A stretch of 64,000 nucleotides of DNA from Magallana gigas (GCF_963853765.1 NC_088859.1:930001-994000); one strand, 5' to 3'; positions 3,849 through 38,965 are shown, counted from the stretch's first letter. Numbers and translations are program-made. The notes: generated by a model not told the origin, from the sequence alone.

Positions 3849-6015
3849 TTACTGGTGTGGTGTTGACTGAACCACATCTTGTGTTCTCCTCTGTGTAGCA
3901 GTTCGTATGTTGTGCACTGGATACTGTGTGAGTGACTGTTGGTATGAGTATAGAGCAGCCTGGAGGTTCCCTGTGATCTGTTGACAGATCCCCAGGATCT
4001 CCCAGGAGATGTCTCTGAGTACATGTATATACAGCCCCTGATCATGGTGGACTAGGACCTGTAACTCATCTAGAGCTGCTTGTGATAATGTTGTATCAAT
4101 GTGTCTGTAACACAAGAACTCTAGGAAGTGTAACATTACAAACACTGGGATATTTGATGTAGGCTGTCTGTTCTGTAGAGCAGACTGTTGTTCTGGTATT
4201 AGTTCATTGATATAACAGATTTTGTTGTAAAGTAAGATATCCTGTGCTACAGCCTGTCTCATCTTTGTAGACCAGGACTGTCCCCCTACAGCCTCAGTAT
4301 ACCTCTCTCTGTGTACATGTGTCTCATGCATCAGATAAGGCTGTGCTAACTTTACCTTTGTCATCTTTATAACAGATAAAGCTTCCCTGTATCTGAGTGT
4401 TTTGTAATAATACATGGCAAGATACAACATGTCAGAAACAAACCCAAACTTGGCTGCTAATTTCGGCATTTGCCTTGATATTTTGTCTGCAATATACATC
4501 TGTTTGTTGACACCTGTGATAGTGTACATGCTGTGTAATATAAAAGCAGTGCGCTGAAGGACAGAGGCTGTAAGTTTCTGTAACGTGATAACTTGGTACT
4601 GTGTCAGGGGCGAGTTTAACAACTGTTCTACTGTATATAGGTATTTCACACAGCTGTGGAGATTTACTGTGTGTACAGTAGCCGTACGATTTATCTCAAA
4701 GAAAAGTTCTGTATCATAGTCAACTTCAGATTTAATTAAAATTTCATCTGCACGAACAAAAAGTCTTGGATTGTACAGGACATCAATGATGTAGGACCTG
4801 ATAGAGGAACTCTGTAACAGACAGGCCAGACCTTTCTTGTACAATTCATGTAACTGTAGGAACAATCTGTTTTGTGCTGAGCCATGGACTTTTGTTAGAA
4901 ACAGGTTATTTTGTGGAATGAAAAAGTTGGGACATATCCCCTCATACACCCATTTAAGGAGGAGTTTAAAGCAGGTCCAGAAACCGACAAGGAGATTTTG
5001 TGGACACCAGTGAGGTAGTGTATTTTGTTCAATTACCCAAAATATGCATGTCTTCATGTGATAAGAACACAGCAGTTTGTTGTTTTCGTTTAAATGTTGA
5101 TTGACAATTTCTTTTAAAAACAGCTTTAACAATCCATAAGTCAAAAACTGACAGTGGTTCATTGCACACACACATTTATACTCTGCCTGAGAAAACGAAA
5201 ATCTCCACTCCTCATTTTTATGGGGGCCTAATTGGTGTCCTATTGCTACAAAGTGACATCCATTTCTGACAATGTCATCAACAACTTCAGGGCCAGGCCA
5301 TAAGTGACACCTGTCTATCCACGAGGAGGCAGACAGAGGCCAAAAGTCACAAACAAAACAGTGAGCAGTGTCATATTCTACTATCCCTGCTATACTTCCA
5401 CTACCACAAGGACCATGTACTGTAGAATTGGAAAAAACTGTTGAACAAGTTAACTGTCTGTATATAGAACTAGATATATAGACTCTGTCATTCATTCGGA
5501 CACATGCTGATTGAACTTCTCTTAGTGTTGTTGGTGTCAGTAACTGAAGTAGAGTGAATCCTGGTGGACTCTCATAACTCTCAGAGAGAATCAAGGTTGT
5601 ATTGGCTATGTTGTAATACTCAGACTGAAACATGTCCATGATCACTCGGTGGTTATTTGGCCAGTACATAAAGTCCACATCTGATCCCTTCAGTCTAAAT
5701 CCTTCTCTATCACTTCCACTGATCATCTGAATGACCCCATCATTAGGTGTCACTCGTCTCTCCACCATCTCTGTTATGTCAGTTGTCTCCCTCCTGATTG
5801 CCACCTGTTGTGAGGTCCCCACTATCTCACACAGTACCATAAACATTGACTCTGACATATGCCGGAGTCCTTCACACCTGAATTGAATGGGTGTATAGCT
5901 ATTGTTTTGATAATGTTTAAGTTATTTTTACAAATAATGTTATAATTGTGTTTACATTCTTAAAATGAAAATATAATAATGGATAAACTTACAATTCTGC
6001 TGGGGAAGACTCCAT
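3849..6015 (-). CDS. cGAS-like receptor (cGLR; Mab-21/cGAS nucleotidyltransferase + C-terminal helical TPR-like region), copy 1, about 683 aa
   Basis: The 669-aa ORF carries the NTase motif SGSDREGFRLKGSDVDF, a third acidic residue in EYD, and the Mab-21/cGAS motifs EWRFSFSQAE, SYHMKT and CPNFFIPQNNLF. A 23-nt upstream exon (6015-5993, ATG GAG TCT TCC CCA GCA GAA TT) joins in frame over a GT-AG intron (5992-5878), giving MESSPAELCEGLRH-MSES... Confidence 0.9.
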
Positions 6016-6850
6016 TATGAAAGCGAACTCTATATCTGTGGAAATTTACGCTATTTTAAGATGCTGGAATTTTATTTTATTGTACTTTCATTTTGTTTCA
6101 GTCGTATATTTCATTATAATGTCTTCAATCGGTTTACTACTAGTAAGTTTGATTTATTGCAAATGTGATTTTCAGTTAATATCAAAAAGTCATTGCACAA
6201 TGTGTATAAATCTAACATCAAATTAAATAATAATGAACATTGATCATTGCGAAAGTGTTGGTTACATAAAGAATTCATTTAAATCATTTAGAGAACACAA
6301 GTAATTCGTCTACACAAGAAATCAAAGTACTGACATGGGCTGAGTTTATTGATTATTATTTATTTTTATGGTTTTACTTATATGCAACGTGTTGACATAT
6401 TGTTGATTCTTTAAATTTGTGAAGACTTTGGCCCCTGGACAATTCTTGGCCTCACAACGGGTTCAAAGTTCATTGTAGGTTTAATTTATATCCCGTATAT
6501 ATACAAACAATAGTTTCTATAGGATCTCTTTAAGAACTGCAATGCTCATTATGTGATATGACGATAAAATCATCCTTTTAGAAAAGGGGCTTAATGATAA
6601 ACAGAAGAATATTTAGGGGGTGGATTTTTATTTATACACTCAGGATCTACATGTATTATACTACATTGTCCACAGATTTGCGAGCGCAGCAAGAATTAAA
6701 CATATTTTGCATCATTGTCAACCTAGTGTTATTTAGGTATCAACGAACGTCAAAGAATTTTTGAGAGATTATTTCTCTACAATAAGTATGCCGGGGCAAA
6801 TGTACTAATTTTAATGGGCATGATACATACAGCGCACCCCTATCCCTTCC

Positions 6851-6852
<2 letters not shown>

Positions 6853-6920
<68 letters not shown>
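6853..6920. repeat. (GA)n microsatellite
   Basis: Pure GA run. Confidence 0.95.
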
Positions 6921-36739: not shown

Positions 36740-36895
36740 GGCGCGTTTGACCGGTCAGCAGAGGATGTTCACTCCTCCATGACACCTGATCATACCTCTA
36801 ATTTTTACAGAGGTCCGTGTTCGCTCTGTTCTTGTTTTGCAATTCTCCTTTGGACTTTTGATTTTGAACACTGTTTGTTATCACCCCATTTCATT
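36740..36895 (+). mobile_element. Retroposon-derived interspersed repeat just downstream of the cGLR copy 2 stop
   Basis: cacggcgcgtttgaccggtcagcagaggatgttcactcctccatgacacctgatcatacctct...gtccgtgttcgc resembles a common bivalve retroelement tail as I recall it. Confidence 0.5.
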
Positions 36896-36942
36896 CTTAA
36901 ATATTCATGTTTGATGTACTAACTCATTTAGAGGTGTGGGGT

Positions 36943-38965
36943 TTACTGAACCATATCCTGTATCCTACTCTGTGTAGCACTTTGTATGTTGTGCACTGGA
37001 TACTGTGTGAGTGACTGTTGGTATGAGTATAAAGCAGCCTGGAGGTTCCCTGTGATCTGTTGACAGATCCCCAGAATCTCCCAGGAGATGTCTCTGAATA
37101 AATCACGTACATACAGTCCCTGATCATCGTGGACTAGGACCTGAAGTGCATCTAGAGCTGCTTGTGATAACGGTGTATCAACATGTCTGTAACACAAGAA
37201 CTCTAGGAAGTGTAACATTACAAACAATGGGATATCTAATGAAGGCCACTTGTTCTGTAGAGAAGACTGTTGTTCTGGTATTAGTTCGCTGATATAACAG
37301 ATTCTATTGTCTAGTATAATATCCATTGCTACAGTTTGTCTCATCTTTTTAGACCAGGACTGTCCCCCCACAGCCTCAATATACTTTTCTCTGTCTACAT
37401 GCCTATCATACATTAGATATGGCTCTGCTAACTTGACCTTTGTTATCTCTAAAACAGATAAAGCTTCCCTGTATCTGAATGTCTTGTAATAATAAATGAC
37501 AATGTACAACATGTCAGAAACACATCCAAACTTGGCTGATAATTTAAGAATATAAGAGGAAGTTTTGTCTGCAATATACATCTGTTTGTTGAACTTGATG
37601 CCAGCGTTAGTGTATGTATTGTGTAATATAAATGCAGTGTTCTGAAAAATAGTTGTTGTATGTCTTTTTAATTTAAAGATTTGATAGCTTCCCAGGGGTG
37701 ATGCTACCAACTGTTGTATTGTAAATAAGTATTTCACACAGCTGTGAAGATTTCCCGGGGGTGTGTTACCATTATGAAATACCTCAGTGAAAAGTTCTAT
37801 ATCAATGTCCACTTCAGATTTGATTATACCTTCATATATATGAATAGAGGCTCTAGGATTGTAAAAGACATCAATGATGTAGGACCTGACAGAGGAACTC
37901 TGTAGCAGACAGATCAGACCTTTATTGTACAATTCATGTAACTGTAGAAACAATCTGTGTTGTGCTGAGCTATGAACCTTGGTCAGAAACATGTTGTTCT
38001 GTGGGATGAAAAAATTCGGACAAATCCCTTCATACACCCATTTAAGGAGGAGTTTAAAGGAGACCCAGAAACTGATCAGAAGATTTTGTGGACACCAGTG
38101 ATTTAGTGTATTTTGTTGAATCGCCCAAAAAACCGTTGTCTTCATGTGATAGGAACACAGCAGTTTATTGGTTTCGTCTAACTGCTGATTTATAACTTCT
38201 TTTAAAAACAATTTTAACAGACCATAAATCAAAAACTGACAATGATTCATTGCATACACACATTTGTACTCTGCATTGGAAAAAGAAATTCTCCATTCCG
38301 TGTCGCTATGAGGTCCTAATGGGTTTCCTATTGCTACAACATGACATCCATTTCTGACTATGTCATCAACAACTTCAGGATCAGGCCATGAGTGACACCT
38401 GTCTATCCATGACAAGGCAGACACAGGCCAAAAATCACAAATAAAACAGTGGGCATTGTCATATTCTACTGTTCCTGCTAAACTACCACTACCACAGGGT
38501 CCATGTACAGTAGAATTGGGCATTTTTGCAGAACAAGTCAATTCTCTGTATTTAGAACTAGATATATAGACTCTGTCATTCATTCTGACACATGCTGATG
38601 CAATGTCTCTGTCTGTTGTCAGTGTCAGTAACTGAAGTAAAGTGAATCCTGGTGGACTCTCAGAACTGTTGGAGAGAATCAAGGTTGTATTGGCTGTGTT
38701 GTAATATTCAGACTGAGACACGTCCATGATCACTCGGTGGTTGTTTGGCCAGTACATAAAGTCCACATCTGATCCGTTAAGTCTAAATCCTTCTCTCTGA
38801 CTTCCACTTAACATCTGAATGACCCCATTATTACTGGTCAGTCGTCTCACCACTACCTCCCTGATATCCACTGTCTCCCTCCTGATTGCTACCTGTTGTG
38901 AGGTCCCAACTATCTGACACATCCTCACAAACACTGCCTCTGACAGGTGCTGCAAACCATCACAT
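36943..38965 (-). CDS. cGAS-like receptor (cGLR), copy 2, about 660-675 aa
   Basis: Uninterrupted ORF with SGSQREGFRLNGSDVDF, EYD, EWRISFSNAE, SYHMKT and CPNFFIPQNNMF, collinear with copy 1. It has the same acceptor position (38966/38965). The ORF-track start is a TTG; the first in-frame ATG is at 38922. Confidence 0.88.

What the first reader, a model, noticed from the sequence alone, without database searches (positions are those of the whole stretch)
3849..38965. Local family of three cGAS-like receptors (two intact, one dead) interleaved with housekeeping glycosylation genes
Seen: three minus-strand paralogs. Both intact copies keep the GS...DxD...D catalytic set and lack the vertebrate cGAS zinc ribbon. 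Known: bivalves have large cGLR expansions, and some oyster cGLRs make cyclic dinucleotides on sensing nucleic acid. Inferred: this is an actively turning-over (birth-and-death) innate-immune locus encoding two probably active, uncharacterised second-messenger synthases.
Basis: partly seen in the sequence, partly recalled or inferred. Interest (0 to 1): 0.7.

Follow-up and report, generated by a model that had tools for sequence, protein, structure and literature searches.

The report
Oyster TPR-tailed cGAS-like receptor paralogs
The window holds two intact genes and one decayed copy of a cGAS-like enzyme with a repeat-helix tail; they belong to a very large Pacific oyster family that a 2023 survey already catalogued, and whose trigger and product are still unknown.

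Summary
Two intact minus-strand genes (copy 1, exons 3849-5877 and 5993-6015; copy 3, exons 36943-38965 and 40984-41006) and one dead copy (30349-32132) encode Mab-21/cGAS-fold proteins. Both intact copies keep the Gly-Ser, Asp-x-Asp and third Asp active-site residues. Both lack the cGAS zinc thumb. An SLC35-type transporter gene and fukutin lie between them.

- This is not a self-contained local family. The genome (Magallana gigas) holds at least 66 near-full-length copies at 71-81% identity and 502 first-look candidates. Copy 1 is closer to copies elsewhere on the chromosome than to copy 3.
- Each protein carries a roughly 330-residue TPR-like C-terminal domain. Li et al. 2023 counted 168 cGLRs in C. 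gigas and noted TPR fusions.
- They purified a 77%-identical paralog; it is not marked as one of their 15 active enzymes.
- The enzyme domain has a pI of 6.2-6.7, unlike known DNA/RNA-sensing cGLRs (above 8.5).
- dN/dS between the intact copies is 0.41 (p = 8e-12), and copy 3 is transcribed and spliced, so the genes are functional.
- The local duplication is old, not recent.

Best reading: catalytically competent orphan cGLRs gated by a non-nucleic-acid ligand. The scan has also noted this family in other windows of this genome. It is an ordinary member of a known, uncharacterised clade.

The parts
3849..5877 (-). Copy 1, large coding exon including the stop codon. With exon 1 it encodes the annotated 683-aa protein (P0001, XP_011418263.3).
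   Evidence: ORF; 100% match to P0001; AG acceptor at 5878-5879.
5993..6015 (-). Copy 1, first coding exon (23 nt, ATG at 6013-6015), followed by a 115-nt GT-AG intron (5878-5992).
   Evidence: Peptide search and sequence reading.
5673..5717 (-). Copy 1 codons for G48-S49 (5712-5717) and D60-V-D62 (5673-5681): the activation loop and the first two catalytic acids.
   Evidence: Invariant in 39/39 paralogs and at least 90% of 40 distant full-length relatives. They sit on the strand-loop-strand expected for a Pol-beta-type NTase in the model.
5370..5372 (-). Copy 1 codon for D163, the third catalytic acid.
   Evidence: Aligns with the 'YD' of human MB21D2 at the start of the HMMER match. Invariant in the paralogs.
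3852..4823 (-). Copy 1 C-terminal TPR-like alpha-solenoid domain (ORF residues about 346-669).
   Evidence: AlphaFold model pLDDT 93.8. Only class-level TPR matches. Sub-threshold Pfam TPR hits. AlphaFold DB matches come almost entirely from bivalve proteins, several named Mab-21-like.
30349..32132 (-). Copy 2, a decayed pseudogene. It lacks the first ~194 nt of the large exon (Gly-Ser and Asp-x-Asp region), has many frameshifts and 4 in-frame stops.
36943..38965 (-). Copy 3, large coding exon including the stop. With exon 1 it encodes the 681-aa protein P0033 (XP_011418331.3, LOC105321659). An ortholog is annotated in C. angulata.
   Evidence: RNA-run contigs lie on it with few differences.
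40984..41006 (-). Copy 3, first coding exon. The intron 38966-40983 is GT-AG on the minus strand.
   Evidence: Peptide search, sequence, and a spliced RNA-run contig joining 38965 to 40984 (table 5).
12897..18570 (-). Neighbour gene: SLC35/triose-phosphate-transporter-family membrane transporter (multi-exon).
   Evidence: Three exon ORFs hit Pfam TPT PF03151 at 1e-16 to 1e-23.
20662..27389 (+). Neighbour gene: fukutin. The penultimate exon is at about 24310-24430 and the last exon ends at 27389.
   Evidence: FKTN_N hit. C-terminal fukutin-like motifs read in frame. The last exon is unique apart from one local pseudo-copy.
33436..33624 (+). Pseudo-copy of the fukutin last exon (90% identical, 2 stops), carried along by the ~6.2-kb tandem duplication that made copies 2 and 3.
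29616..29808 (+). Pseudo-copy of the fukutin penultimate exon. A second, broken one lies at 35785-35965.

Best explanation
Copies 1 and 3 are functional members of the bivalve TPR-tailed clade of cGAS-like receptors. Among solved structures the closest by sequence is human MB21D2. Each protein is a cGAS-fold nucleotidyltransferase of about 345 residues with a complete active site, rigidly joined to a TPR-like helical solenoid of about 330 residues.

Most likely mechanism (inferred, not shown): the enzyme is held inactive until a ligand other than double-stranded nucleic acid engages the TPR-like domain or the remodelled ligand face. TPR domains usually bind peptides or proteins, so a protein or peptide of pathogen or host origin is the likeliest kind. 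The enzyme then makes a cyclic (oligo)nucleotide that is read by one of the oyster's several STING-type receptors.

Copy 2 is a dead by-product of an old ~6.2-kb tandem duplication that also copied the two 3' exons of the neighbouring fukutin gene. The three loci are a small sample of a genome-wide expansion maintained by duplication, loss and probably exchange between coding exons.
For: Shown here:
- Pfam Mab-21 and Mab-21_C above cut-off.
- Full-length AlphaFold model with pLDDT 93 and pTM 0.91. Its N-terminal half matches cGAS, Cv-cGLR1, MB21D2 and MAB21L1 at Foldseek probability 1.0 and target-normalised TM 0.57-0.72.
- G48, S49, D60, D62 and D163 are invariant in 39/39 intact paralogs and kept in at least 90% of 40 full-length relatives at 25-43% identity. 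R219, K245, S265 and K269 are invariant in those relatives. They lie in the 'EWRxSF' and 'SYHxKT' motifs that align with cGAS.
- Omega is 0.41 between the two copies (p = 8e-12) and 0.31 in the enzyme domain.
- An RNA-run contig is spliced exactly at the predicted copy 3 intron, and 35-41% of copy 1's sampled 31-mers occur in RNA-type runs from several studies.
- The C-terminal domain is class-level TPR and is conserved along the full length of relatives in Crassostrea, Saccostrea, Pinctada and Argopecten.
- The enzyme domain pI is 6.2 and 6.7. Li et al. report pI above 8.5 for DNA/RNA-sensing cGLRs.

From the literature: C. gigas has 168 cGLRs and 6 STINGs, and TPR fusions are noted (PMC9980059).
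Against: - No member of this clade has a demonstrated product or ligand.
- Two relatives were purified in the Li et al. screen and are not marked among the 15 active enzymes. These are EKC17707.1 (= P0062, 77% identical to copy 1) and the C. virginica LOC111100821 protein (current version P0132, 43% identical). The EKC17707.1 construct lacks the N-terminal helix, so that negative result is weak.
- No 30-codon window has omega above 1. The most variable stretch (residues 361-450) also has high synonymous divergence. There is therefore no positive evidence that the tail is a diversifying sensor surface.
- The expression evidence is thin: one spliced contig, and most raw reads laid on copy 3 came from paralogs.
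- I could not inspect model coordinates, so the active-site geometry and the domain interface are unverified.
Confidence: 0.5

Rival explanations
1. They are non-enzymatic signalling scaffolds. The Mab-21 fold and the TPR-like tail bind partner proteins (for example a TBK1/IKK-epsilon-type kinase) and no nucleotide messenger is made.
For: Shrimp Mab21 proteins did not bind dsDNA or dsRNA and made no cGAMP in response to ISD or poly(I:C); instead they activate IKK-epsilon directly (PMC12928593). It is not understood whether MAB21L1-related proteins make nucleotide signals, and human MB21D2 remains an orphan with no known activating ligand. Two clade members are not marked active in the published screen. 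TPR domains are typical protein-protein modules.
Against: The catalytic Gly-Ser, both Asp of Asp-x-Asp and the third Asp are invariant in 39/39 paralogs. They are kept in at least 90% of relatives down to 25% identity, while the mean column identity is 35%. That conservation is hard to explain without catalysis or at least nucleotide/metal binding.
Confidence: 0.25
2. They are nucleic-acid sensors like Cg-cGLR1/Cv-cGLR1 or Drosophila cGLR1: dsDNA or dsRNA binds the enzyme domain and switches on cyclic dinucleotide synthesis. This is the reading implied by the first reader.
For: They share the cGAS fold. Some oyster cGLRs are dsDNA-activated and make 2'3'-cUA (PMC9980059).
Against: Those enzymes are distant: the match to Cv-cGLR1 (8gjw) has E = 1e-4 and covers the C-lobe only. 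The enzyme-domain pI here is 6.2-6.7, against above 8.5 for known nucleic-acid sensors. A 77%-identical paralog and a 43%-identical relative are not marked among the actives of a screen that used pooled nucleic-acid PAMPs.
Confidence: 0.1
3. The copies are functionless passengers of a runaway amplification. On this reading the ORFs are intact only because the family is young or is homogenised by gene conversion.
For: The tree is star-like with long tips. Homology between paralogs stops sharply at the exon-2 acceptor and the stop codon. Synonymous divergence is very uneven along the gene, 0.11-0.49. Omega is fairly high in the tail, with a family median of 0.67.
Against: Omega is significantly below 1 and falls to 0.12-0.28 across residues 180-360. 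37 of 40 fetched paralogs are intact despite dS of about 0.3. The architecture is conserved across oysters, pearl oysters and scallops. Copy 3 gives a spliced transcript. The local copy that really is unconstrained (copy 2) is visibly wrecked.
Confidence: 0.1

Closest known systems
TPR-fused cGLRs of bivalves as catalogued by Li et al. 2023 (PMC9980059). Examples are Table S3 entries EKC17707.1 (C. gigas) and XP_022288656.1 (C. virginica LOC111100821).
   Same: Same family and architecture. EKC17707.1 is P0062, 77% identical to copy 1. The current protein of LOC111100821 (P0132) aligns over the full length at 43%.
   Different: Nothing substantive; these are paralogs. The two window genes themselves were not found in the held parts of the supplement, which are partly cut.
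Human MB21D2 (C3orf59), PDB 7lt1
   Same: Best sequence match among solved structures: E = 1e-10 over residues 161-320. Same bi-lobed cGAS fold. It is an orphan cGLR with a putative catalytic triad and no known ligand. Early oyster annotation named these proteins 'C3orf59-like'.
   Different: The matched MB21D2 chain is 464 residues, and the C-terminal domain alone found only generic TPR proteins among solved structures, not MB21D2. The sequence match covers only about 160 residues. Orthology was not tested.
Cg-cGLR1 / Cv-cGLR1 (PDB 8gjw), the dsDNA-activated oyster cGLRs that make 2'3'-cUA
   Same: Same superfamily and fold, and the same host genus.
   Different: Distant in sequence (E = 1e-4, C-lobe only). 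They have no TPR tail. Li et al. report pI above 8.5 for the DNA/RNA-sensing cGLRs as a group.
Vertebrate cGAS
   Same: NTase core, Gly-Ser loop, acidic triad, and the 'EWRxSF' and 'SYHxKT' motifs.
   Different: No zinc thumb (about 11 residues shorter at that point), near-neutral enzyme domain, extra TPR-like domain.

Membership tests
cGLR (criteria of Li et al. 2023) | Catalytic residues: Gly-Ser activation loop, [DE]x[DE], and a third [DE] | tested here: met
   Copy 1 has G48-S49, D60-V-D62 and D163; copy 3 has the same at +3. Invariant in 39/39 paralogs and kept in at least 90% of distant relatives.
cGLR (criteria of Li et al. 2023) | Literal motif h[QT]GS-X8-20-[DE]h[DE]h-X50-90-h[DE]h | tested here: not met
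   The residue before Gly-Ser is Ser, not Gln/Thr. The gap from the Asp-x-Asp strand to the third Asp is about 98 residues, not 50-90. This was read from the ORF against the motif quoted. The authors nevertheless included a 77%-identical paralog, so the published pattern is looser in practice.
cGLR (criteria of Li et al. 2023) | Homology across both the NTase core and the C-terminal helix bundle | tested here: met
   Pfam Mab-21 (E = 5.6e-9 and 2.1e-7) and Mab-21_C (E = 4.4e-12 and 2.6e-11), all above the gathering score. The Mab-21 match covers only the last third of that profile.
cGLR (criteria of Li et al. 2023) | Predicted structural homology to cGAS/CD-NTase | tested here: met
   Model pLDDT 93. 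Foldseek probability 1.0 and target-normalised TM 0.57-0.72 to cGAS, Cv-cGLR1, MB21D2 and MAB21L1.
cGLR (functional definition) | Ligand-dependent synthesis of a nucleotide second messenger | not testable with these tools
   Needs biochemistry. The nearest tested relatives are not marked active in the published screen.
Vertebrate-type cGAS | His/Cys zinc thumb between the lobes | tested here: not met
   About 11 residues shorter than mouse cGAS at that site. No conserved Cys in the family consensus. The model has only a 3-residue loop there.
Nucleic-acid-sensing cGLRs | Basic enzyme domain (pI above 8.5) with a positively charged groove | tested here: not met
   The pI of residues 1-345 is 6.22 for copy 1 and 6.70 for copy 3. 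The threshold comes from PMC9980059. Groove charge could not be examined.
TPR repeat proteins | Recognisable TPR repeats | tested here: inconclusive
   Pfam TPR_1/TPR_2 hits lie below the gathering score and cover the last repeat only; 15 of 40 relatives have such a hit. VIA Z of 11-12 to kinesin-light-chain, LGN, PlcR/Rap, TOM70 and APC TPR domains is under the ~13 noise level for helical repeats. Foldseek E is about 1e-2.
MB21D2 orthologs | Orthology to vertebrate MB21D2 (reciprocal or phylogenetic) | not tested
   The only evidence is the best PDB sequence hit, ahead of the next hits by less than two orders of magnitude. No tree with vertebrate sequences was built.

The most novel reading that the evidence does not exclude
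The TPR-tailed cGLR clade, with hundreds of loci in one oyster genome, may be a repertoire of direct, non-nucleic-acid pattern receptors. A repeat-helix sensor would gate a cyclic-nucleotide synthase. That would be an animal counterpart of sensor-repeat plus signalling-enzyme immune receptors, diversified by duplication and by exchange between coding exons.
Probability: 0.3. Interest if true: 0.7.

Novelty: new member of a known kind. Interest (0 to 1): 0.3.

Why it matters
Bivalves survive dense microbial exposure without adaptive immunity. Their cGLR expansion is among the largest known, and most of it is orphan. This locus adds no new kind of gene. It does give a clean, well-modelled example of the TPR-tailed clade and corrected gene models with the full N-terminus, which the one paralog tested so far lacked. 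It also gives evidence of constraint and transcription, and reasons to look for a ligand other than nucleic acid. Finding the ligand and product of any member would open up a large part of oyster innate immunity, with relevance to OsHV-1 and Vibrio mortality in aquaculture.

Tried and rejected
- Site-wise selection by ancestral-state counting: the machine does not offer ancestral sequences. I did not work around that and used pairwise Nei-Gojobori windows instead. No window had omega above 1.
- Looking up the two window proteins' accessions, or exact peptides from them, in the Li et al. supplement. Nothing was found, but two of the files are cut, so this says nothing.
- Retrocopy origin: rejected. 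The paralogs share the phase-2 intron, and homology starts at the exon-2 acceptor rather than continuing into exon-1 sequence.
- Spread of fukutin fragments with cGLR copies elsewhere: rejected. The fukutin last exon has only the one local pseudo-copy in the genome.
- Presence/absence variation inferred from cluster membership: not inferable. Older annotations simply hold fragments of copy 3.
- Model coordinates are not exposed to scripts. I could not measure active-site distances or see which face the tail covers.
- Literature search for 'C3orf59' with oyster, and for cGLR with TPR, found only Li et al. 2023.
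Full report
**What is in the sequence**

The window is G000:C7:930001-994000 of a Magallana (Crassostrea) gigas assembly. A tblastn search with either long ORF finds three minus-strand loci and no more. They are 3852-5858, 36946-38955, and a fragmented copy at about 30344-32125.

The two intact ORFs are 75% identical in protein and 83.5% in DNA. Both are annotated RefSeq proteins: XP_011418263.3 (683 aa) and XP_011418331.3 (681 aa). Each gene has a 23-nt first coding exon (5993-6015 and 40984-41006), a canonical GTAAGT donor, and a phase-2 intron of 115 nt or 2018 nt. 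Copy 3 therefore reaches 2 kb beyond the finding's end coordinate.

Copy 2 lacks the first ~194 nt of the large exon. It has more than a dozen frameshifting indels and four in-frame stops.

**Family and fold**

Both proteins pass Pfam's cut-offs for Mab-21 and Mab-21_C. An AlphaFold model of copy 1, built on 40 diverse full-length relatives, has pLDDT 93 and pTM 0.91. Its first ~345 residues match cGAS, Cv-cGLR1, MB21D2 and MAB21L1 at Foldseek probability 1.0, with TM 0.57-0.72 normalised by the target. By sequence the nearest solved structure is human MB21D2 (E = 1e-10). After it come a cGLR1 (8gjy), MAB21L1, cGAS and, far behind, Cv-cGLR1.

**Active site**

- G48, S49, D60, D62 and D163 (ORF numbering) are invariant in 39 of 39 intact paralogs fetched from this genome.
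- They are kept in at least 90% of 40 full-length relatives at 25-43% identity, where the mean column identity is 35%.
- R219, K245, S265 and K269 are invariant in those relatives. They lie in the motifs that align with cGAS 'WRLSF' and 'SYHVKT'.
- The cGAS zinc thumb is absent. The protein is about 11 residues shorter there and the family has no conserved Cys at that point.

**The tail**

Residues ~346-669 form a confident helical solenoid (pLDDT 93.8). Pfam gives only sub-threshold TPR hits. Foldseek against the PDB gives E of about 1e-2 to APC6, IFIT5 and kinesin light chain. The exhaustive aligner gives Z of 11-12 to TPR proteins such as BtubC, LGN, PlcR/Rap and TOM70, which is below the noise level for helical repeats. 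It is therefore TPR-like at class level only.

In AlphaFold DB the tail matches almost only bivalve proteins, several named Mab-21-like. Relatives that align over the whole length occur in Crassostrea, Saccostrea, Pinctada and Argopecten.

**Size of the family**

- A profile-free search of 1.8 billion cluster representatives gives 3480 hits at E up to 1e-3 and 444 at E up to 1e-30.
- In this genome 502 first-look candidates were found. All 66 that were scored are near full length at 71-81% identity. They cluster on contigs C7, C2, C6, C8 and C4, with single copies elsewhere.
- A DNA tree of 40 copies is star-like. Copies 2 and 3 group together, weakly, with one copy at C7:0.85 Mb. Copy 1 groups with copies at C7:1.02, 4.8-4.9 and 5.5 Mb.
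- Synonymous distance between copy 1 and copy 3 is 0.34, larger than between copy 1 and several distant paralogs at 0.22-0.25.

The 'local family of three' is therefore a sample of a chromosome-wide and genome-wide expansion.

**How the local copies arose**

Copies 2 and 3 lie in a ~6.2-kb tandem duplication (27003-32132 against 33208-38773). Non-coding identity is 74-80%, giving K of at least 0.19. The duplication also carried pseudo-copies of fukutin's last exon (33436-33624, two stops) and of its penultimate exon (29616-29808 and 35785-35965). The real fukutin gene ends at 27389. The fukutin last exon has no other copy in the genome. The duplication is old, so 'actively turning over' overstates this locus.

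At family level there are near-identical tandem copies, for example three equal-scoring copies 20.6 kb apart on C6. Three of the 40 fetched paralogs are broken.

Homology between copy 1 and nearly all of the 40 fetched paralogs begins at about the exon-2 acceptor and ends at about the stop codon. Synonymous divergence varies from 0.11 to 0.49 along the gene. Both facts are compatible with exchange between coding exons. I did not test that.

**Constraint and expression**

- Omega between the two intact copies is 0.41: 202 non-synonymous differences on 1569 sites against 116 synonymous on 423, Fisher p = 8e-12.
- It is 0.31 in the enzyme domain and 0.55 in the tail. Family medians are 0.37 and 0.67.
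- Residues 180-360 are the most constrained (0.12-0.28). Residues 361-450 are the most variable (0.64-0.86), but their synonymous divergence is also high. No window exceeds 1.
- RNA-type runs from several studies hold 35-41% of copy 1's sampled 31-mers.
- One RNA run gives long, near-identical contigs on copy 3 and one contig spliced exactly from 38965 to 40984. Most raw poly(A) reads laid there were only partly alike and come from paralogs.

The expression evidence is real but thin.

**Comparison with what is known**

Li et al. 2023 (PMC9980059) curated 3,020 cGLRs. They list 168 cGLRs and 6 STINGs for C. gigas. They note that some cGLRs are fused to TPR domains.

Their table of 140 purified proteins includes two relatives:
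- EKC17707.1, which is P0062, 77% identical to copy 1.
- The C. virginica LOC111100821 protein, whose current version is 43% identical over the full length.

Neither carries the label given to the 15 active enzymes. The active oyster enzymes, Cg-cGLR1 and Cv-cGLR1 (activated by dsDNA, product 2'3'-cUA), belong to a different clade without the tail. The EKC17707.1 construct starts inside the first helix, so that negative result is weak.

DNA- and RNA-sensing cGLRs have pI above 8.5. The enzyme domains here have pI 6.2 and 6.7.

**Mechanism**

- Shown: cGAS fold, complete and conserved active site, conserved two-domain architecture, purifying selection, transcription.
- Inferred: the proteins are ligand-gated nucleotidyltransferases. 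Their trigger is not double-stranded nucleic acid and probably involves the TPR-like domain. Their product feeds one of the oyster STINGs.
- Main rival: a non-catalytic scaffold role, as reported for shrimp Mab21 proteins that activate IKK-epsilon (PMC12928593). The strict conservation of the catalytic residues argues against it but does not exclude it.

**Verdict**

The clade is already catalogued and a close paralog has been through a biochemical screen. The nucleic-acid-sensing analogy is the weakest part of the interpretation. The scan has noted this family in other windows of this genome. This is an ordinary member of a known but functionally orphan clade.

Noticed in passing
window 3849-5877 compared with loci L001-L040: DNA homology between copy 1 and nearly all 40 fetched paralogs starts at about the exon-2 splice acceptor and ends at about the stop codon, even for pairs at 86-88% identity. 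Synonymous divergence varies four-fold along the gene. This suggests exchange or gene conversion limited to the coding exon, or duplication of the exon alone.
   Followed up: partly
window 24270-24485, 27003-28312, 29616-29808, 33208-34495, 35785-35965: The two 3' exons of fukutin have decayed pseudo-copies interleaved with cGLR copies 2 and 3, with a period of about 6.2 kb. The real gene keeps intact copies and ends at 27389.
   Followed up: yes
window 22418-22841 and 20842-20969: Tandem arrays inside fukutin: a 23-nt unit repeated 18.6 times at 97% identity, and a 41-nt unit repeated 3 times. Both sit at or next to exon ends, and the unit contains GTATGT-like donor sequence. Another reader noted this as reiterated 5' splice sites.
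   Followed up: no
window 8620-9729: A 43-nt satellite-like tandem array of 25.8 copies at 96% identity, between copy 1 and the SLC35-type gene.
   Followed up: no
window 7421-8207 and 43825-44662: Two copies (87% identical) of a roughly 800-bp element that is its own inverted repeat, built from 21/42/63-nt sub-repeats. It looks like a foldback or MITE-type element.
   Followed up: no
window 54951-55024 (-): A tRNA-Cys (GCA) gene. Nearby genes are ASF1 (from 50.5 kb, +), a coiled-coil ORF (49596-50063, -) and a WD40-repeat gene (57-63 kb, +).
   Followed up: no
G000:C6:1883510, 1904098 and 1924685: Three cGLR-TPR copies with identical scores spaced 20.6 kb apart. They are either very recent tandem duplicates or an assembly repeat.
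   Followed up: no
Like fukutin, POMGNT1 is (from my own knowledge) a dystroglycan-glycosylation gene. This is probably coincidence given the copy number, but it was not checked.
   Followed up: no
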